In this document: positions 1 to 55,955 of the stretch, in pieces
Position numbering within the stretch: position 1 is the first letter of the stretch
How the letters are laid out: every line of letters begins with the position of its first letter
The notes under the pieces: generated by a model
The model's database searches: none
What the model was told of the DNA's origin: nothing
Seen by the model: only the letters and a program-made list of their open reading frames with translations
Source of the DNA: Rebecca billardiae RCC1528
Taxonomy: Eukaryota > Protista > Haptophyta
Reading direction: 5' to 3'
Assembly (NCBI GenBank): GCA_965240325.2
Contig: OZ251245.1
Location: 310,001-374,000, forward strand
DNA length: 64,000 nucleotides
Made by a program: the position numbers and the translations under genes

Positions 1-81
1 GGACGGCGCTCAGTCGCGCTGGGGGCTTCGGCGCTTCGTTCGCACTGTTCGCAAGCCGCCTCGGCACAAGAGCCAGCCACG

Positions 82-2047
82 ATGGCGCCGCACGCGCTAG
101 CGGCGCTCGGCCTCGCGGCCGGCCTCGTGGCGGGCGGGCACCTCCTGGACGCGAGCTTCTGGGAGAGCACGCGAGACTGCTACTCGCCCGATGGCACATT
201 GGGGCCCTGCCGCCCGGGCGTCGAGCTCTGCGCCCCGCCCGGCAGCGCGCTCGAAGAATCGCCAAGATTTCACATCGCCGACGCGACGTGCCGCGTCAAC
301 GACCCGAACGGCCCGGTGTACGACCCGAAGCACGGCGTGTACCACCTGTTCTACCAGGACCACCTCGCTATGGGCCACGGGCGCGGCCCCATCTACGGCC
401 ACGTCGCGTCGCGCGACATGGTGCACTGGGCGCGGCTGCCAGTCGCTATTTGGAACGACCAACCGTACGACTCGGTCGCCATCTACTCCGGCTCGGCGGT
501 CGTGGACGACGACGGGAGCGTGGTGCAGATCTACCCCGGCCTGTGCAGGCGCGACACGTGGGACGCGTGCACCACCGGAACCAACCTCGCGATCGCGCTG
601 CCAGAAGACCCGGCCGATCCGCTGCTCCGACTTTGGCAAAAGCCGAAGCAGTATAACCCGGTCGTGAACGGCACGCAGCGCGACCCGACGACGCCGTGGC
701 GCGAGCGGAGCGGCGAGTGGCGCCTCACGACGTACAACACGATGATCTACGCCTCGCTCGACCTGCGCCGCTGGTACACGCTCGGCCACCAGCCCAATTT
801 CGTCATTGCTGAATGTCCGGGCTTCTTCCCACTGCCGCCACTCGCGCCGGGCTCCGGGCGCGCGCCGGAGGGCACGCCTGCGTACACGCACGTGTACAAG
901 TACTCGGTGGGTCGGAAGGACTGGATGGTCTTGGGCACGTACGAGGAGCGCGGCGCCGGCGTGCTCGGCGCGTGGACGCCCGCGCCCAACGCGCGCATCA
1001 TCGACCGCGGCGCGTCGTACGCGTCCAAGGATTTCTACGATCCGGCCGGGAGGTGTGCGCTGTGCGCGGCCCTGTCCTCCGTCCGGCTGTGGGCGTGGGT
1101 GCGCGTGCTTGCACAGCGGCTCTCCGTGGGCTGCGGGGGCGCAGCGTGGGTGCACAGCGGCTCTCATTGGGCTGCGGGGGCGCAGACAGGGCGGGCAGGG
1201 CCAGGCTGGCGCACGCCGTGCTGCGGCGGCCCGGGGACACGCAGAGCCCGTCACGCGGCAAGGGCGCCCCGCGCGCGCCCGGCTCACTGCTGCGCGCCCA
1301 CCGCCGCGCCGCGCGCGCCGCTGTCGCATCAGGCGGCGCATCAACTGGGCGTGGGCCCTAGTGCCGCCCGCCTCGGCCATGACCCTGCCGCGCGAGATCA
1401 CCTGGCACGCCGCCCTGCAGCAACTCGTCTTCTCGCCGCTCGAGGAGCAGGCCGCCCTCCGCGCGCGCGTGCTCGCGCGCGCGCGCAATCTGACTCTGAG
1501 TCGAGAGTCCGGTCGGATGCTTGTCCGTCCGTCGAGGGCGGCAGGCGCGCAGGCCGAGGTGCTGCTCGAGTTCGCTCTGCCCCGCATCGCGGCCACGTTT
1601 GGCGTGCGCGTGGGCGGCAGCGGCGAGGGCGACACTGGCTGCTTTTTCTTCGTGCGCTACCGGCCGCCGCCCGCGCGCCGCGCGCAGCCGTACACAGCTA
1701 TTGTCGGCGCACGGTGCACGGGCGGCCGCGGCGCGGACGACTGGAGTGCGGCTGATTTGCTGCAGCTGCTCCCGGCGGAGCGGAGCCTGCGCCTGCGCGT
1801 CTTTGCCGACCGCACGATGGCGGAGGGGTACTGGCAGGATGGGCGCGTGGCGCTCACCGCGCCCATCCCAGCCTGGCCGACCGACGGCGCGGGGCCGCCG
1901 CCAGCCGGCATCGACCTGATGGCGCGCGACGGCCGTGTCGCGGTGCTGAGCGCGGAGGTGCACGCGGTTGCGGACATCTGGGTGCCGCCCGAGCAACTGC
2001 TGGGCCCCGCGGGCGGTGGCGGCCCGCGTGCTCGTCCGTCAGCCTGA
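82..2047 (+). CDS. Glycoside hydrolase family 32 (beta-fructofuranosidase/invertase-like), secreted; 2 exons (82-1052, 1333-2047), 561 aa
   Basis: N-terminal hydrophobic signal; GH32 catalytic motifs VNDPNG, YSGS, RDP, AECP, plus YASKDFYDP. GT-AG intron 1053-1332 joins FYDPAG-RRRINWAW in frame with ORF 806..2047 (MTLPRE, C-terminal beta-sandwich region). Confidence 0.9.
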
Positions 2048-47460: not shown

Positions 47461-47582
47461 CGTTCACCCGCGCTCGCTCGACGGCGGCTGGCTTGCCCGT
47501 TGGCACAAGCTGAAAGCTACACGGCGGCCGAACCGCTGCGCAAGCCAAACAATAATCATCAGAAGAAGAAACAGCATTATTG

Positions 47583-48409
47583 ATGTCAGCACCAAACTCC
47601 AAAAGGCAAAGGCCCAAAAGCTCGGCCACGCAAGGCCACGGCCGCCCGGCCGCGCCGAAAGGCGGGCGGGACCGCTCCATCACATACACTCGCTCGGCGG
47701 TGCGCCACGCGATGATCCACGGCGCCCGCACGCGGTGGCGTCGGGCGAAGTCGGAGGTGCGACTGCAGGTGCAGATCGGCAAGCGCCGCTTCTCGGGCAA
47801 GCCGGACGAGCTGGACGGCGCGGCGCGCACGGCCGAGCAGAGCGAGCGCGCAGACTTGCTCGACTACAGCTCGTCGACGGACGACCTTGGGCTGGGCGCG
47901 CCGAGGATCGTGCTCAATCCGAACATGGCCCCGACGCCGGTATTCGCGACCCTCGGCGACGCGCCCGCGCCCGTCCCAGACCTGTCCCCGACGTCGGCGG
48001 CGGCCGGCCCTAGGCAGAGCGCGCTCACGGCCATCGACGCTTCGCCGGTCGTGAGCTCGAGCGCGCTGAGCGATGCGGGCAGCAGCGATGCGGGCGGGCG
48101 CGACGGGACGAGCAGCGCCGGCAGCTCGGAAGGCACACTCCCACACCTCGATCTCACCTCGTCGCCGCCCCTTGCCGCCACGCCTCCTGCCGAGATTCAC
48201 GCCCCGCCGCCTCCGGCCCTTGGGTCGATGCCGCTGGCCGCGGCCCCGCCCGCGAGCGCGCCGAGCCGCTCGCCGGTGGGTTCGGACCGCGCGGTTTCGG
48301 GGCCGCCCGATCGCACGATCACGCCGAGCTCGCCGGGCTCTCGCCCCGCGCCGGCCTCGAGCCACGCGCCACAGGCAGGCGGCGGCGGCGGCGGCGGCAC
48401 TGGCGGCGG

Positions 48410-48441
<32 letters not shown>

Positions 48442-50577
48442 GCGGCGGCGGCAGCTTCGGAGTTCGCCGGGCCGCTGCGGGGAGCACGGGCGATGGGCAC
48501 GTGGCGCCGACGGGTGGCGGGCAGCGTGACGCCGCCGGCGGTAGCGGCGGGCCCGCCAGCCCGCCCGGCCCCGGCGGCGGCGGGCACGCGATGCCTTCGA
48601 ACATCGTTCCAGCCGGCGGCGGCGGCGGCAGCGGCAGCGGCGGCGGCGGCGGCGCGGCCGCGGACGGGCGCGCCGACCACGAGAAGGAGTGGTACGAGAC
48701 AGGCGACAACCTCTCGACCACGCAGCTGCTCAGCTCGGCGGAGTGGCAGGCCTCCTCCGTCTGGACGTACGACGGACTCCTCGCCAGGCTGCAGATGATC
48801 GCTGACAACGGCATGCCGCGCATGCGCGTCGTCGCCGCGTCTAGGCTCGAGGGCCTCGGGGAGATCCCGCGCTCGAGCGAGGGGCACGCGGTGGACGCGC
48901 TCGAGGCGGTGCGCCGGTGCGGGCCCGACGTGGAGAACCGGCCCAAGGCGGTGCTCGTGATGTTCAGCCACCGCTGGCTCCGCCCGCTCTGGCCGGACCC
49001 GCACAAGCGCGCCCATCCGGACTCGATCGACGGTGCCAAGGCGAAGGTGCGCCCGCGCCCGCGCCCGCGCCGTGCGGCGCGCCGTGCCGGGCGCGTGAGC
49101 GTCAAGGCCGTGCCGGGCGCGTCGGAAGGGCGGGTGGGCTCACGCGCCCTGCCTGCGCGCCGCGCGCGCGCCGCGCGCGCACAGGCGGTCGTGCAGTGGG
49201 CGAAGTGGTTCAAGTGGTGGCGGATCCACGGCACCGGCCGCGAGTTTGTCAAGGGGGTCACCGTCGACCCGGGGCTGGAGGTGTTCTTCTGGTGCGAAGG
49301 CTGCGCCGACTCTCGCGCCATCAGGCGGCGCCATCGGCGTCGCAGCGCGCGCGCGCGCGTGCTCGCCGTCTCGGGGGCTCGGGGCGGATGCAGCGGCACT
49401 CAGCAGTCCGATACGGCCGCGGCCGCGGCGTCGCGAGCGCCGGCCGCGCGCGGGCGCAGCGAGCGAGGGACCCGCGTCATCCGCGCGCTGCTGCCTCGGC
49501 CGCCGTCCTCCCCTCACGCGCGCCCCGCGCCCCCGCCCTCCGGACCGCAGGGTCGACTTTGCGTGCGTGGACCAGGACTCGCCCGGCGCGGAGATGGCCG
49601 CGCTCCCAGCCTACGTGAGCGCGTGCGCCGAGGTGGTCATCTTCCAGTCACACGACTACGACGACCGCGCGTGGTGCCAGGTGGAGCTGATGATGGCGTT
49701 TGCCTTCATGACGGTCGGGGACAAGATCTTCCAGATCCCGCCGGGCTTCGAGCACCGGCGGCAGCGGCACGTCACCTTCCGGCGGTACGCGCTCCCGGAC
49801 CCGCTCGCGGGCAACCTCACCAACGAGGGCGATCGCAGGGTGATCTCCGAGCTGCGAGATTGCGCCAGCAGCTCGCGCGCGTTCACGCTGCGGCGCGCGT
49901 GCGAAGGGCTCTTCTGCACGGGCGCGGCGCGCGCGGCGCTGTGGGCCGTGTGCTGCTGCGGCTGGCTCGGGCTCGCGGCGTGGCTCAACGCGCGCACCGT
50001 CCGCGTCGGCCGCTCCGTCGTCTATCGGCTCACGCCGGCGTCGGGAGGTGCAGACGCGGGCAGCGCCGACCGGGCGACGGCGCTCGAGGCGGCTGCGGAG
50101 CTGGCGCGCCTGCGCCAGCAGTGGGCGGAGGAGGCGGCGGCCGCCGCCGAGGCCGACGCAGCCAAGGCCGCGGCGGAGGCCAGGGCGGAGGCGGAGGCGG
50201 CCGCGGCCCTCGCCAGCCAACCTCCTGCGCGCACGGTCCGGGCGCAAGCGAGCGGCGGCGCGCCCGCGCCGAGCGGCGCCGCCGACGCGGCGGGCAGCGG
50301 CGGTGGCCCCGGCCGTCGTCGCCTGCTCTTCGGCCGAGCCGGCGGCGGTGTCACGGGCGGTGCTCGGACGAGTGGCGGTGGCGCGCGGCTCAGCACGGGC
50401 GGCCCGAAGAGCGCACGCGCGGCCTTCGGCGGCGTCCGTGCTCGGCTGCCCAAGCTGACGCCGCGCGGCGGCGGCTCGGGCGCGCAGGCCGCTGGGCAGG
50501 CCGTGGCTGCGAGCGCTCGCGGGAGCTCGCGCGCGCCAGCCCGCGACTCGCAGGCGGCGTCATCGTCGCTTCATTGA
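47583..50577 (+). CDS. HET-domain-like protein with a long disordered Gly/Ser/Pro N-terminus; 3 exons (47583-49046, 49185-49291, 49551-50577); start codon uncertain
   Basis: After two GT-AG introns are removed: MFSHRW...HPD...FFWVDFACVDQD...LPAYVSAC...Y..RAWCQVE. Confidence 0.65.
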
Positions 50578-51212
50578 AGCCGCCGCGAATAGCGAGAGCG
50601 CCGCGTATAGTATAGCTAGGAGTGACTTCATCTGGTAGCCAGGCTACGATGGCCGCCTTCAAGGGAAGCCGTCGGGCCCGTCGCGGGCCCTGGGCGCCTG
50701 GCCAGGGTAGTAATCTTTGCTGCTGGTATCTTCAGGCCGAAACCCTCCCGCTCACTTTACCTTTATATATATATGATTATGGTAGTACTAGTAGTGTACA
50801 GAAGTAGTCTCTGAAAGTCGTAATGCTGCTATCATAAGCGAACAATGCCGCTTGTGTGTGGTGCCGGGACCGGTAAAATGTTTTTGAACCGCGAGCGTTC
50901 GACGCGACTCCAATTCACACAGGCTCGTGTGTGACGTCGAAAAAGCTCCGAATATTGCGCACGCGGCAACGGTTCAAAGCTTCGTTGCACCATAGGATCT
51001 GCTCAAGAGCTGCGGTAAATCGGGTAGGATCTCCAAATCATTGCAGGGTTAATGGCGGGCCGTTTTATCTCCGATCTGGCGAGAGATCGTGATCCCTCTC
51101 CGTGACTTTGCAAACGCGACCTGCGTACACACAAGCCAACCAACCTCGACCGTCCAACGACATCGGCCCCGGCCAAATCGCGCACGCGCAGCGAACCAGC
51201 CTGATCGTCGAC

Positions 51213-54200
51213 ATGGGCTTCCTCAGCACCAGCCGGGATCCGCAGGCGCTCCTCCCGAACGGCATGGACAAGGCGACCGTCCTCGACTCCGCCCCCACCA
51301 GCCGCACCATCGTCGCCTGCTGCGTCTGCTTTTACGTGATCGCCGTCGTGACGACGTTCCTCAAGCTCGGCGACTCGACCGAGCACCTCCTCCCGGCCGA
51401 GCAGTACGCCGCGCAGTGCGCGGGCACTGTACTCGCCGCGTCTGTCGTTCTGCGCACTATCCATCTCCTCTCCCAGCGCGGCTCGAAGACGACCACCGCC
51501 GACATCGCCATGCTCGCGACGAACGCGATCGCTGCGTCGTCCAACCTGCTGATGGGCACGATCCCCACGCCGATCATCGTCGACAAGGTCACCGGCACGA
51601 GCGAGTACATGATTCGCTGGTGCGAGTGGACGACGCTTGCCTTCTTGATGACGTTCATCGTCGAGGGCCTCACCGCCACCTCCCTGGGCGAGGCCCTGTC
51701 GCTCGCGCTGCTGATGGGCGTGAGCGCGGGCTGCGGCCTCGTCTTCCCGTTCTGCGAGGGCGTGTGGACGTGGGGCTTCGTGATGACCGTCTCCTTCGTG
51801 ACGTACTTTGCTCTCTTCCCGCGCTACGCGCGCCGCCGTCGGCTGTACCACGAGGCGGTCGCCTCGTGCATGAGCGCGAGCGACGTCTCGCGCGTCGTCG
51901 CGACCAAGGTGAGCTACTACCTGATGACGTGCTGCACTGTCATGTGGACGCTCATCACGCTCGACTACTGCGTGACGTGGGCGGCAGCGCTCTACCAGGG
52001 TGCGGGCTATGGCCTCGGGCAGAAGCGCCCGCAGTGGCCGTTCATCCTCGACTGCGTGCTCGACGTCACAGCCAAGCTACTGTGCGTGCGGGCAGCGCGC
52101 GTCCGCGCGAGCCACTGTGCACGCGCGCGCGCGCGCCATCTGGCGAAGCGCAACGAGCGCGCTCACCCGCCGACCGAACCACCCCTGCGGCCCCGGCGAT
52201 GCCCGCGCGCCTCGTGATGCCGTGCAGGTACGCGCACATCATCTCGACGGGCCACGCGCACGTGCCGCGCGAGGCGGAGCGGCAGCAGGCGCGCTGGATC
52301 CGGGAGGCCATGGACATGGTCTGGTCGGGCTCGCAGGACACGATCGTGCTCTCCGAGCTCCAGGGCGAGGGCACCGCGCGCTCCCTCGCCTCGACCGGCC
52401 TGGCGAAGCTCATCGGCGAGGAGAACGCGCAGAAGTGGTCGTCGTGGCGCACGCAGAGCGTCGTCATGCAGGCAAGCTCGCTCAAGCTGCCCTCCGCCGA
52501 GCTCTCGTCGCGGACGCCGTCCGTCGACGGCTCGTCTTCCGGCGACGAATCGTCAACAAACTCGTCCTTTTCCAACTCGAGCTCCCCGTGGCGCGAGAGG
52601 CCGCAGATCCGGGACATGAAGGTGCACGACCAGCTCTCCCCCATGCATGCCGCGGTGCACCCGCTCGTTCGCCCGCTCAACCTCGTGGCCTCCAGCCCCT
52701 CGGACTCCGGCCGCGCGACCGCCTCCAACCCCACGGACGCGTGCGCTTCCTTTGAGAACCTCATCTCGGAGGCGTGGGCGTCGTCCTCGCGCGCGGAGGG
52801 CCAGACGTGCTCGCTGACGTGGTGCGCGCACTTTGACGACGGCTCGGCCGGCGGGCAGGAGAAGCACTGCGAGATCCAGGTCACCCAGTGCGAGCGCGAG
52901 CTGCCCGTCGAGATGCCGCGCGGCTCGTCGCCGATGCGCGAGCGCTTCCTGATCCTCGTCATCCGCGACGTGACCGAGCGCACGCGCACGGCCGATCTCG
53001 AGAAGCAGCTCATGAACGAGATCGCGGACAAGACGGTGCTCGCCGAGCGCATCGGGCGGAAGAAGGACGAGGAGGCCAACCGCTTCTCGCGCCACGAGGT
53101 GAAGAACTGCGTGCTCGCCGCGATGGCGCAGTGCGAGGCGCTGGTCGAGTGGCACACCAAGACCGCCGAGTCGTTCGCAGCGGGCGTCGACACGCAGCCG
53201 CTGCGCGCGGGGCTCGAGGACCTCAGCTCCAAGCTGCAGCGCACGCTCAACACGGTGCTCGCCGCGGCGATGGCGAAGGACCTCGCGAACGGCGAGTACA
53301 GCCCGAAGCCCGAGTTCACCAAGGTCGAGACGCTGCTGCGCGACAACCTCGCCTCGTGCGGCCGATTCCAGCTGAGCCTCTCGCCGCGGGCGCTGCCGTC
53401 GGTGCTGCTAGACCCGCAGCTGCTCTTCTGCGTGCACCGCAACGCCATCTCGAACGCGGTCAAGTACGGCTGCGCGACGAGCCCGATCGAGACCGTCGTC
53501 GAGGTCAAGGCGGGCACGCTCACGCTGCGCGTCATCAACATGCCCGGGCCGAACCACGACAAGCTGCTCGGCGGCCACGGCTCGGGCGAGCGCGTGTTTG
53601 AGCGCGGGCTGCGGCTGCACGACGTGGACGAGGAGCAGGAGGCGCGCGCGCTGCACACCGAGCGCGTCTCGGCGGGCGACGGCGGCTGGATCATGCGCCG
53701 CTGCGCGCTCGCGCTCGGCGGCGAGTGCACGATCGCGTTCGAGCCGGACAAGACCGTCTTCGAGCTCTCGTGCCCGGTGCGCACGCGCGAGGAGTACGAC
53801 GAGGAGTACGCGACCAAGGCGACGGTCGGCTTTGAGCTGCCGCCCTCCACCGTCTGCATCGGCATCGACGACTCCAAGGTGCCGCGCACCATCCTCAAGA
53901 AGATCTTCTCCGCGGTGGGCGCGAAGCCGGAGCAGACGAGCATCTACGGCGAGTGCGACGAGCACATCGTCAACCTCCCCTCGCTGCTCGTGCAGGCCGT
54001 GCGCGCGCACCCGAAGCAGCGCGTCTTTGTGATCGGCGACGAGAACCTCGACCTGACCGAGGGCTGCTCGTGCACCACCGTCTCGTGCACGCAGGCGTTT
54101 GCGCAGCTCGGCGAGCTGCTGAGCGAGGAGGAGCTGGCGCGCGTGCTGCTCGTGATCCGCTCGGCGAACGACTCGAAGGCCGACGTCGACTGCTACCTCG

Positions 54201-54664
54201 AGCACGCGCACGCGGTGCTGCCCAAGCGCGGCTTCGCCAAGCAGGCGACCATCGACGCCATCGCGCCGATGTGGCGCACGCGCTTCGCGCCGAGCACGCC
54301 GAGCGGGCAGTCGCGCCTGCAGTCGCCGAAGGGCGCTTCGACGCGGCCCGCGACGATGCGCGCCAGCATGGCCAGCGGCGGCGGCATCACGAACGAGATC
54401 CGCTGCGAGGTGAGCAGCACTGTCAGCAAGCTGATCCGCGAGCTGAGCTCGCGCTCGGCGCCGTGGTCGCAGGTGCGGCGCAGCCTCATCACCATCAAGG
54501 GCGAGCTGGCGAGCCTCAACGCCGTGTGCTGCACGGACGAGGAGCGGGCCACGGACGTGATGCGCTGCATCCAGGCGCTGCTCGAGCACGAGGACGAGCC
54601 GCCCGCGTTCCGCGCGGAGTGGCCCACGCTGCCCGGCGCCATCAACCGCGCGCTCGTCGTGTGA
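51213..54664 (+). CDS. Microbial rhodopsin-histidine kinase hybrid (rhodopsin + PAS-like + HisKA + HATPase + receiver + degenerate Hpt); 2 exons (51213-52081, 52228-54664), 1101 aa
   Basis: About 8 TM with helix C RWCEW and helix G DVTAK; intron 52082-52227 (GT-AG) joins AKLL-YAHII. Then IRDVTER, NRFSRHEVKN, NAISNAVKYG, SAGDGG, IGIDDS, VIGDENLD, IRSAND, LITIKG. Confidence 0.85.
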
Positions 54665-55120: not shown

Positions 55121-55955
55121 ATGGGCGTGCACGCGCAGGTGCCCGGGATGCGCTCGATGGAGGCGGTTCGCACCGTGTGGCGGACGGCCGCCGCGGTCTG
55201 CTTCGACGTCGACTCGACCATCGTGAGCGAGGAGGGCATCGACGTGCTCGCGGCGCACTGCGGCGCGGGCGAGGCGGTGGCCGAGTGGACAGCGAGAGCA
55301 ATGGGCGGCGGCATCCCCTTCGAGGTGGCGCTCGAGGAGCGCCTGAAGCTGATCCAGCCCTCGCGCGCCGCTGTCGAGGCGTGCATCAACGCGCATCCGC
55401 TGCCGCTCACGCCCGGTGTCGCCGAGCTCGTGAACGCACTCCGGAAATCGGGCAAGCGCGTCTTCCTGGTCTCAGGCGGCTTCCGGCAGATGATTGTGCC
55501 TGTGGCGAAGGCGCTGGAGATACCGATGGAGGACGTGTTCGCGAACGACCTCCTCTTCGACGAGGGTGCGCGCGCGCGCGCGCGGCGCGCGCGCCACCCG
55601 AGCCTCATGGCACTTCTCTCACCGGGCGTTCGGGTCGCCGCGCACGCCCACGCCGCCGCGCCGCGCGACAGACGGTCAGTTCGCTGGCTTCAACCGCGAT
55701 GAGCCGACGTCGCGATCGGGCGGGAAGGCGGTCGTGATCGAGCGCCTCAAGACCGAGCGCAAGGTGCCCTCGGTCGTCATGGTCGGCGACGGCGCGACCG
55801 ACGCCGAGGCGTGCCCGCCCGCCGACGCGTTCATTGGGTTCGGAGGTGTCCAAGTTCGGGAATCGGTCAAGGCTCTCGCGCCGTGGTACGCCACGTCGAT
55901 GGCGGAGCTGCACGACGAGCTGAAGCGCGAGCCGCTGCAGCAGCCCGCGGCCTGA
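55121..55955 (+). CDS. PSPH: Phosphoserine phosphatase (HAD family); 2 exons (55121-55565, 55672-55955), 242 aa
   Basis: FDVDST, EEGID, T..AMGG, VSGGF, SRSGGK, GDGATD, FIGFGG. Confidence 0.93.

What the first reader, a model, noticed from the sequence alone, without database searches (positions are those of the whole stretch)
51213..54664. Hidden light-sensing phosphorelay: rhodopsin fused to PAS-like, His kinase, receiver and Hpt-like modules
Seen: the ORF track splits this gene over two frames. Removing GT-AG intron 52082-52227 gives one 1101-aa protein. Its membrane part has helix C RWCEW (51615-51629) and helix G DVTAK (Lys codon 52074-52076). It is followed by IRDVTER, an H-box RHEVKN (His 53093-53095), N-box NAISNAVKYG, a G-rich box, a receiver (DD, Asp 54038-54040, S, K) and an Hpt-like tail. 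Established: RxxD/EW and DxxxK are the type-1 rhodopsin counterion and retinal-lysine motifs; enzyme rhodopsins have an extra N-terminal helix, as appears here; the characterised green-algal histidine-kinase rhodopsins (COP5-type) are rhodopsin-HK-receiver-cyclase. Inference: this is a different, cyclase-less architecture that may have arisen independently, i.e. a single-chain light-gated two-component sensor in a non-green alga.
Basis: partly seen in the sequence, partly recalled or inferred. Interest (0 to 1): 0.88.

Follow-up and report, generated by a model that had tools for sequence, protein, structure and literature searches.

The report
Hidden rhodopsin-histidine kinase light sensor gene
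This intact two-exon gene of a very GC-rich haptophyte alga joins an eight-helix retinal-type light-sensor domain to a PAS-like domain, a histidine kinase, a receiver and a four-helix tail. It belongs to a large haptophyte and diatom family that standard domain searches miss and that I found in no paper.

Summary
ATG 51213, GT-AG intron 52082-52227 and stop 54662-54664 give a 1101-aa protein, and every motif sits at the stated coordinates. No RNA run was listed. The junction rests on gapless alignment to five homologues, one from a Pavlova gyrans transcriptome, and on loss of GC3 periodicity exactly inside the intron.

The N-terminal 289 aa get no Pfam hit, but they model (pLDDT 93) as an 8-helix microbial rhodopsin. 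The best solved match is rhodopsin phosphodiesterase (Z 21.9, TM0 included). R135, W245 and K288 are invariant in 70 full-length relatives.

Downstream, the fold is PAS-like, then DHp-CA (Z 15-17), then receiver (CheY Z 14.8), then a four-helix tail.

Two corrections:
- In this copy the tail has Ile1044 where 50 of 57 relatives have the Hpt-type His, so the relay is not complete in one chain.
- The whole family lacks the canonical G1-box Asp.

Cyclase-less rhodopsin-HKs are already known (Ostreococcus), so this is a new variant of the histidine-kinase rhodopsin kind. Independent origin was not testable. The scan has already reported at least six followed-up paralogues on other DNA of this genome, with the same reading.

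The parts
51213..52081 (+). Exon 1: residues 1-289 plus two bases of codon 290. Holds the whole rhodopsin domain up to and including the retinal Lys.
   Evidence: First in-frame ATG of ORF 51102-52217. GC3 is 0.93.
52082..52227 (+). GT-AG intron, 146 nt. If retained, the exon 1 frame stops at 52215-52217 and no kinase is made.
   Evidence: GTGCGT...GTGCAG. Codon-position GC is flat. The junction is gapless against P0001-P0005.
52228..54664 (+). Exon 2: residues 290-1101 plus the stop codon.
   Evidence: Open frame to 54664. GC3 is 0.97.
51291..51365 (+). TM0, the extra N-terminal helix (residues 27-51).
   Evidence: AF2 helix H27-51. It aligns with TM0 of Rh-PDE: model 21..289 against 7d7q, Z 21.9, and profile alignment from position 5.
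51393..52081 (+). Seven-helix rhodopsin core (residues 61-289) with a BC beta-hairpin at 119-132.
   Evidence: AF2 pLDDT 93.1, pTM 0.89. Thirty-six microbial rhodopsins match at Z 13-22, ahead of TMEM87A (about 13) and GPCR-like folds (10 or less).
51615..51629 (+). Helix C motif R135-W-C-E138-W139, the positions of bacteriorhodopsin R82, D85 and W86.
   Evidence: R 70/70, E 69/70, W 65/70. It aligns to RYAEW of Rh-PDE.
52062..52076 (+). Helix G motif D284-V-T-A-K288. K288 is the presumed retinal Schiff-base lysine.
   Evidence: K 70/70; D284 is D or E in 65/70. The helix F-G profile's best PDB hit aligns DViaK to DVIAK of channelrhodopsin GtCCR2, E 0.05.
52229..52969 (+). Cytoplasmic extension of helix G (residues 292-324) and a PAS-like domain (328-537). 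A disordered Ser-rich insert lies at about 373-457 (52475-52729).
   Evidence: AF2 secondary structure and pLDDT. Co-linear structural matches to PAS-DHp-CA kinases: 8a7h E 1e-13; 9eut, 4i5s, 3a0r and 8a3u span model 1-530. No Pfam PAS hit.
52973..53287 (+). DHp helical hairpin (residues 539-643). H-box R-H579-E-V-K-N, His codon 53093-53095.
   Evidence: AF2 helices 249-315 and 323-353 of the exon-2 piece. H 67/70, E580 65/70. HK853, CusS and ShkA match at Z 16-17.
53306..53788 (+). CA (GHKL ATPase-type) domain, residues about 650-810. It has the N-box N699, a non-canonical G1 box V-I-N727-M-P-G (53537-53539), an F-box and the G2 box G773-D-G775.
   Evidence: Pfam HATPase_c scores 18.5 bits, below the 26.4 cut-off; 34 of 41 relatives hit it. 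CA domains match at Z 15-16, rmsd 2.3-3.2. The G1 Asp has no counterpart when aligned to a canonical HK.
53831..54289 (+). Receiver domain (residues about 825-977): DD837/838, D894 (54038-54040), S935, K956.
   Evidence: CheY 6tg7 matches at Z 14.8, rmsd 2.2, 129 of 130 residues aligned; SLN1, CKI1 and ETR1 receivers at Z 13-14. Residue census. Pfam Response_reg hits only 8 of 38 relatives, best E 0.004, and not this protein. Language-model neighbours are mostly Response_reg clusters.
54383..54661 (+). C-terminal helical bundle (residues 1009-1101). It is Hpt-like in the family (L-H-x-L-K-G-D-L), but here reads L-I1044-T-I-K-G-E-L (Ile codon 54488-54490).
   Evidence: AF2 helices 719-810 of the piece, pLDDT mostly 62-94. 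His in 50 of 57 relatives; Ile here. Pfam Hpt hits 7 of 33 relatives, best 0.002, and DUF7032 hits 11 of 33. UniRef names paralogue-type P0109 an 'HPt domain-containing protein'. hhalign to a canonical Hpt was not significant.

Best explanation
The gene encodes a membrane photoreceptor of the histidine-kinase-rhodopsin kind.

Inferred mechanism:
- An 8-helix type-1 rhodopsin binds retinal at K288. E138 and D284 serve as counterions and R135 sits beside them.
- Light-driven movement of helices F and G passes along the cytoplasmic extension of helix G and a PAS-like domain to a dimeric DHp-CA kinase, and changes autophosphorylation of H579.
- The phosphoryl group then moves to D894 of the fused receiver.
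- Because the C-terminal Hpt-like bundle of this copy has Ile where the family has His, the last step must go to a separate phosphotransfer protein or to a paralogue. The tail then acts as a docking or regulatory pseudo-HPt.

Shown here: the gene structure, the folds, and the conservation of the catalytic and chromophore residues.

Not shown: retinal binding, kinase activity, the direction of light regulation, and the downstream partner.
For: - The gene is intact and its junction is gapless against homologues, including a transcript-derived Pavlova gyrans protein.
- Rhodopsin fold: Rh-PDE Z 21.9, rmsd 3.2, 248 residues aligned including TM0, followed by 35 more microbial rhodopsins. Foldseek gives the same order.
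- The family profile hits Rh-PDE at E 6e-8.
- R135, W245 and K288 are invariant and E138 is 69/70.
- PAS-DHp-CA and receiver folds are matched.
- H579, N699, the G2 glycines and the receiver DD/D/S/K residues are conserved.
- The family is large: 288 clusters at E<=1e-3. Its members occur in haptophytes and diatoms.
- Relatives in several MMETSP transcriptomes show that the family is expressed.
Against: - There is no RNA evidence for this locus; no runs were listed.
- Pfam Bac_rhodopsin, HisKA, Response_reg and Hpt do not hit this protein, and HATPase_c is below its cut-off.
- The adenine-binding Asp of the G1 box is missing in all 66 relatives, which have V-I-N-x-P-G. Canonical ATP binding is therefore uncertain.
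- Anchored on the R135-E138-W139 motif (my own register, from memory of the bacteriorhodopsin sequence), helix C lacks the Thr and Pro seen at those positions in bacteriorhodopsin and Rh-PDE. The pocket is atypical.
- Nothing here shows chromophore binding or catalysis.
Confidence: 0.7

Rival explanations
1. It is a light sensor, but the CA domain is not an ATP-dependent autokinase. The DHp-CA module would act as a phosphatase or phosphotransferase, as a scaffold towards the receiver, or would use another nucleotide.
For: The canonical G1 Asp, which contacts the adenine amino group in GHKL ATPases (established knowledge), has no counterpart. The family motif is V-I-N-x-P-G, with Asn 66/66. Pfam HATPase_c is below its cut-off for this protein. 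Seven of 65 relatives have Asn at the receiver Asp.
Against: The N-box Asn, F-box and G2 glycines serve only nucleotide binding, and they are nearly invariant. So is the H-E-x-x-N H-box. The CA fold superposes on ATP-bound kinases at rmsd 2.3-3.2.
Confidence: 0.15
2. The membrane domain is an opsin-like sensor without retinal. It would be a ligand, lipid or mechanical sensor, like the retinal-free fungal opsin-related proteins.
For: There is no Pfam Bac_rhodopsin hit. The helix C and F pocket residues are atypical. No spectroscopy exists.
Against: The Schiff-base Lys is kept in 70 of 70 relatives, together with R135, E138, W139, W245 and D/E284. Retinal-free opsin relatives characteristically lose the Lys (established knowledge).
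Confidence: 0.1
3. This copy is a silent or decaying paralogue of a multigene family, or is expressed only as a truncated rhodopsin by intron retention.
For: No RNA run was listed. The Hpt His is lost. The scan's notes report several paralogues in the same genome (unchecked).
Against: The 1101-codon frame is uninterrupted, with GC3 of 0.93-0.97. All other catalytic residues are intact. The nearest relative, P0001, also lacks the His, so the loss is older than this gene.
Confidence: 0.05

Closest known systems
Histidine-kinase rhodopsins of green algae (Chlamydomonas HKR1/COP5, 2c-Cyclop COP6, Ostreococcus Ot-HKR / Rhod-HK)
   Same: One chain holds a microbial rhodopsin, a histidine kinase and a receiver. 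Like Ostreococcus Rhod-HK, it has no cyclase and presumably signals through a separate HPT protein (PMC4343026; PMC12558739).
   Different: - The lineage is haptophytes and diatoms, not green algae.
- A PAS-like domain lies between the rhodopsin and the DHp, and an Hpt-like bundle follows the receiver. In the survey I searched for those words (PMC7693036), none of its HKR passages mentions either.
- The sequence is so divergent that the Pfam rhodopsin, HisKA and receiver models fail.
- The G1 box has no Asp.
- Whether it branches inside or beside the green-algal HKR clade was not tested, because no HKR sequence could be fetched.
Rhodopsin phosphodiesterase of Salpingoeca rosetta (PDB 7cj3, 7d7q)
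   Same: It is the best sequence-profile hit (E 6e-8) and the best structural hit (Z 21.9). It shares the eight helices including TM0, and Glu rather than Asp in the R-x-x-E-W motif.
   Different: The output domain is a phosphodiesterase, not a two-component kinase. Identity is only 13-16%.
PAS/LOV-histidine kinases and bacteriophytochromes (YF1-type 4gcz/8a7h, PaBphP 9eut)
   Same: The cytoplasmic part runs co-linearly as sensor-proximal helix, PAS, DHp and CA.
   Different: Here the PAS-like domain has no recognisable cofactor family. It carries an 85-residue disordered insert and sits downstream of a membrane rhodopsin.
Pseudo-HPt proteins such as Arabidopsis AHP6 (from my own knowledge)
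   Same: An HPt-type bundle that has lost the phospho-accepting His.
   Different: Here it is fused to the kinase. Its HPt homology is itself only weakly supported.

Membership tests
Type-1 (microbial) rhodopsin | Seven-helix rhodopsin fold | tested here: met
   The AF2 model has pLDDT 93. Rh-PDE matches at Z 21.9 and 35 other microbial rhodopsins at Z 13-19. GPCR-like folds score 10 or less.
Type-1 (microbial) rhodopsin | Schiff-base Lys in helix G, in a D-x-x-x-K context | tested here: met
   DVTAK288, with K in 70/70 relatives. It aligns to DVIAK of GtCCR2.
Type-1 (microbial) rhodopsin | Helix C Arg and carboxylate counterion (R-x-x-D/E-W) | tested here: met
   R135 70/70 and E138 69/70. 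The motif aligns to RYAEW of Rh-PDE.
Type-1 (microbial) rhodopsin | Covalent retinal and a photocycle | not testable with these tools
   This needs expression with all-trans retinal and spectroscopy.
Type-1 (microbial) rhodopsin | Match to the curated Pfam model Bac_rhodopsin (PF01036) | tested here: not met
   No family was found at E<=1 for residues 1-289. One of 41 relatives hits it, at E 0.003. This measures divergence and is not a defining biochemical feature.
Enzymerhodopsins (8-TM) | An extra N-terminal helix TM0 and a cytoplasmic enzyme domain after helix G | tested here: met
   Helix 27-51 superposes on Rh-PDE from model residue 21. The kinase follows directly.
Histidine-kinase rhodopsins (HKR) | Rhodopsin, DHp-CA kinase and receiver in one chain | tested here: met
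Histidine-kinase rhodopsins (HKR) | Branching within the clade of green-algal HKRs | not tested
   No green-algal HKR sequence could be obtained with the tools. The word-indexed searches returned family members and one unrelated bacterial-type kinase.
Histidine-kinase rhodopsins (HKR) | C-terminal guanylyl or adenylyl cyclase (present only in some members) | tested here: not met
   No cyclase appears in Pfam or in the fold. The gene ends at 54664 and a HAD-type gene starts at about 55121.
HisKA-type histidine kinase | DHp hairpin with a phospho-accepting His in H-E-x-x-N/T | tested here: met
   RH579EVKN, with His in 67/70 relatives. DHp-CA matches score Z 16-17. There was no Pfam HisKA hit.
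HisKA-type histidine kinase | CA domain N, G1 (D-x-G-x-G), F and G2 boxes | tested here: inconclusive
   The N, F and G2 boxes are kept. The G1 Asp is absent in all 66 relatives. HATPase_c scores 18.5 bits against a cut-off of 26.4.
Response-regulator receiver (REC) | (beta-alpha)5 fold with the acidic pair, the phospho-Asp, Ser/Thr and Lys | tested here: met
   CheY matches at Z 14.8, rmsd 2.2. D837, D838, D894, S935 and K956 are conserved. The Pfam model does not hit this protein.
HPt phosphotransfer domain | Four-helix bundle | tested here: inconclusive
   AF2 predicts helices 1009-1100. The profile search against the PDB found only designed helical bundles and repeat or coiled-coil proteins.
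HPt phosphotransfer domain | Phospho-accepting His in H-x-x-K-G | tested here: not met
   The window has L-I1044-T-I-K-G. Fifty of 57 relatives have His.
PAS domain | Five-stranded PAS fold N-terminal to the DHp | tested here: inconclusive
   The strand and helix pattern and co-linear matches to PAS-HKs support it. The rmsd values are large, there is no Pfam hit, and the domain was not folded alone.

The most novel reading that the evidence does not exclude
This family (rhodopsin, PAS-like, HK, receiver, Hpt-like) is a previously undescribed and functional clade of enzymerhodopsins. It would be a main rhodopsin-based light-sensing two-component system of diatoms and haptophytes, including Thalassiosira pseudonana. 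Its kinase would bind nucleotide in a non-canonical way, because the G1 Asp is absent. Copies such as this one would have turned the fused HPt into a non-phosphorylatable regulatory module.
Probability: 0.45. Interest if true: 0.82.

Novelty: new variant of a known kind. Interest (0 to 1): 0.7.

Why it matters
Diatoms and haptophytes carry out a large share of ocean primary production. Their known photoreceptors are aureochromes, cryptochromes and phytochromes.

Surveys and reviews in the searchable library list histidine-kinase rhodopsins only from green algae. One metatranscriptome study reported no rhodopsin-HK transcripts in the open ocean (PMC8017926; PMC10865886; PMC12558739).

A Pfam-invisible family of 288 clusters would add a candidate retinal-based light input to two-component signalling in these groups. 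The family includes a 'predicted protein' of the model diatom T. pseudonana and, by the scan's own unchecked notes, several copies in this one genome. It would also offer new enzymerhodopsin scaffolds for optogenetics.

The missing G1 Asp and the His-less tail give directly testable questions about how such a kinase works.

Tried and rejected
- RNA evidence: two run searches listed nothing.
- Pfam on the two pieces gave only a sub-threshold HATPase_c hit.
- The word-indexed protein search returned only 5, 2 and 6 hits. It did not reach green-algal HKRs, even with the 41-sequence profile. I therefore could not build a phylogeny against canonical HKR, RhGC or NeoR. I did not paste literature sequences.
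- The receiver profile against the PDB was not significant (CheY E 0.33). The receiver call rests on structure.
- The tail profile against the PDB gave only designed helical bundles and repeat or coiled-coil proteins.
- hhalign of the tail against the canonical Hpt of P0002 aligned the H-x-x-K-G motif but with probability 0.2%.
- The ESM Atlas gave no usable hit for the tail.
- The Atlas shape search of the rhodopsin model was uninformative.
- Accession searches for the T. pseudonana and D. lutheri relatives found no paper.
- I considered and rejected a further downstream exon encoding a canonical Hpt, as in P. gyrans. Only about 450 nt separate the stop from a HAD-phosphatase-like gene.
- I considered and rejected the alternative splice pairs. 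Most delete the Lys, and the rest break the helix G register.
Full report
**Gene structure**

The + strand between 51089 and 54664 is covered by two long ORFs in different frames. Joining 51213-52081 to 52228-54664 removes a 146-nt intron (GTGCGT...GTGCAG) and gives 3306 nt, or 1101 codons, with one terminal stop. ATG 51213 is the first ATG of its frame.

No public RNA run was listed for the locus, so the junction rests on three other observations:
- The spliced protein aligns without a gap across the junction (...DVTAKLL|YAHII...) to five full-length homologues. One is a transcript-derived protein of Pavlova gyrans, MMETSP1466.
- GC3 is 0.93 in exon 1 and 0.97 in exon 2. Inside 52082-52227 the three codon positions are flat at 0.74-0.80.
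- Of 31 open GT..AG combinations, this one keeps both the helix G lysine and the ...AKLLYAHII... register seen in the five aligned homologues.

**Rhodopsin domain**

Residues 1-289 have no Pfam hit even at E<=1. An exhaustive HMMER scan of 1.84 billion representatives nevertheless finds 288 clusters at E<=1e-3, mostly in proteins of 500-1250 aa.

In a 47-sequence alignment, R135 and K288 are invariant, and E63, D124, E138, W139, P179, W187, R204, C241 and W245 are nearly so. In 70 full-length relatives the counts are R135 70, K288 70, W245 70 and E138 69.

Sequence and structure both point to a microbial rhodopsin:
- The family profile hits Salpingoeca rhodopsin phosphodiesterase at E 6e-8, aligning ...RWcEW... 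to ...RYAEW... and extending into TM0. Bestrhodopsin, sensory rhodopsin II and ChRmine follow at marginal E-values.
- A profile of helices F-G alone has the channelrhodopsin GtCCR2 as its best PDB hit (E 0.05), with DViaK on DVIAK.
- AlphaFold2 with the family alignment gives pLDDT 93.1 and pTM 0.89. It shows eight helices and a BC beta-hairpin.
- Foldseek ranks Rh-PDE first, then bacteriorhodopsins.
- The exhaustive structural search gives Rh-PDE at Z 21.9 (rmsd 3.2, 248 residues aligned, model 21-289). Thirty-five more microbial rhodopsins follow at Z 13-19. TMEM87A scores about 13 and GPCR-like folds 10 or less.
- Language-model neighbours are almost all Bac_rhodopsin clusters.

Anchoring on R135, E138 and W139, the bacteriorhodopsin D85/T89/D96 positions read E/L/I. 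This register is my own inference from the motif and from my memory of the bacteriorhodopsin sequence. It leaves no proton-donor carboxylate, as expected for a sensor rather than a pump.

**Cytoplasmic part**

For residues 291-1101, Pfam gives only HATPase_c at 18.5 bits against a cut-off of 26.4. Of 41 full-length relatives, 34 hit HATPase_c, one hits Hpt, one hits Bac_rhodopsin, and none hits HisKA or Response_reg at E<=0.01.

The AlphaFold2 model (pLDDT 79.8) shows these elements in order:
- a long helix continuing helix G;
- a beta-rich PAS-like domain interrupted by a disordered Ser-rich insert;
- a two-helix DHp hairpin;
- an alpha/beta CA domain;
- a (beta-alpha)5 domain;
- a disordered linker;
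- a helical bundle.

Foldseek's best matches are LOV-histidine kinases (E 1e-13), WalK, a full-length bacteriophytochrome and the hybrid kinase ShkA.

The exhaustive aligner gives:
- ShkA at Z 17.2 and HK853 at Z 16.5;
- isolated CA domains at Z 15-16 with rmsd 2.3-3.2;
- for model 535-687, CheY at Z 14.8 (rmsd 2.2, 129 of 130 aligned), and the SLN1, CKI1 and ETR1 receivers at Z 13-14.

Residue conservation fits an active relay. In 70 relatives the counts are H579 67, E580 65, N699 66/66, G773 64, G775 66, D837/D838 64/65, D894 58 with 7 Asn, S935 65 and K956 65.

**Two departures from the canonical picture**

- *G1 box.* The family motif is V-I-N-x-P-G, with Asn 66/66. Aligned to a canonical hybrid kinase (...VRDNGPGID...), the adenine-binding Asp has no counterpart. 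Because the N, F and G2 boxes are kept, I read this as non-canonical nucleotide binding rather than a dead domain. This remains unexplained.
- *Tail.* It carries L-H-x-L-K-G-D-L in 50 of 57 relatives, which recalls the HPt H-x-x-K-G motif.
  - Seven of 33 tails give weak Pfam Hpt hits (best 0.002), and 11 hit DUF7032.
  - The Diacronema lutheri relative scores 17.2 bits on Hpt and is named 'HPt domain-containing protein' by UniRef.
  - In this gene the His is Ile1044 (54488-54490), and its close relative P0001 has Ala.
  - The P. gyrans sister keeps the His and has a second, canonical Hpt (26.7 bits).
  - Sequence-profile tests of HPt homology were otherwise not significant.
  - This copy therefore cannot complete a His-Asp-His relay within its own chain.

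**Family and taxa**

Named members come from:
- Pavlova gyrans, Rebecca sp., Diacronema lutheri and Pavlovales sp. CCMP2436 (pavlovophytes);
- Chrysotila/Pleurochrysis (a coccolithophore);
- the diatoms Cylindrotheca, Entomoneis and Thalassiosira pseudonana (XP_002287358.1, 'predicted protein').

A FastTree of 63 rows splits into a haptophyte-labelled clade of 14 rows and a diatom-labelled clade of 49. The window protein is sister to the P. gyrans protein (support 99, 45% identity). I left out seven rows that lack most of the C-terminal part, and also P0191.

The window's GC of 65-80% fits the 73% reported for D. lutheri (PMC8379373). I did not identify the species.

**Literature**

Reviews and surveys list HKRs only from green algae and name three enzymerhodopsin families (PMC12558739; PMC7693036; PMC10865886). 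A eukaryote-wide histidine-kinase census seeded with Pfam HisKA and HATPase_c does not report such proteins in diatoms or haptophytes (PMC6324907). An open-ocean metatranscriptome study detected no rhodopsin-HK transcripts (PMC8017926).

Ostreococcus Rhod-HK is described, without mention of a cyclase, as signalling through a separate HPT (PMC4343026), so the cyclase-less layout is not new. Six further searches found no description of this family, and one more was uninformative. No paper mentions the accessions of the relatives. Subscription journals are not covered by the library.

**Earlier scan notes**

Eight other loci of the same genome were flagged with the same architecture. Six were followed up with the same reading, and one of these called it a side branch of the known HKRs. 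These notes are unchecked. I reached the family result independently before reading them.

**Verdict**

It is overstated on novelty of the cyclase-less layout and on a complete single-chain relay, and untested on independent origin. I file it as a new variant of the histidine-kinase rhodopsin kind.

Noticed in passing
window 53537-53539 (N727) and all 66 aligned relatives: The CA domain's G1 box is V-I-N-x-P-G. The canonical adenine-binding Asp of GHKL ATPases has no counterpart, while the N, F and G2 boxes are conserved.
   Followed up: partly
window 54488-54490: The Hpt-like tail has Ile where 50 of 57 relatives have His. The nearest relative, P0001, has Ala. The P. gyrans sister keeps His and adds a second canonical Hpt domain.
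   Followed up: yes
window 52475-52729: An insert of about 85 residues, Ser-rich and predicted disordered (pLDDT about 31-44), splits the PAS-like domain. Its length varies among relatives.
   Followed up: no
window 55121-55955 (+): The downstream neighbour looks like a phosphoserine-phosphatase-type HAD hydrolase (Pfam Hydrolase 8e-13, motif FDVDST...). It is split over two frames, so it probably has an intron.
   Followed up: partly
window 47580-50615 (+): The upstream region is very GC-rich (0.73-0.82). It holds long Gly/Ala/Arg-rich ORFs in two frames and has no Pfam hit. The gene model is unclear.
   Followed up: partly
P0201 in the cluster of P0079: A EukProt 'Alexandrium tamarense' protein sits in the 90%-identity cluster of the Thalassiosira pseudonana family member. 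This is probably diatom contamination of that dinoflagellate transcriptome.
   Followed up: no
same genome, other pieces: The scan's notes list eight more rhodopsin-PAS-HK-receiver loci in this genome, which suggests a multigene family of nine or more copies. One was flagged as 'phosphorelay-dead'.
   Followed up: no
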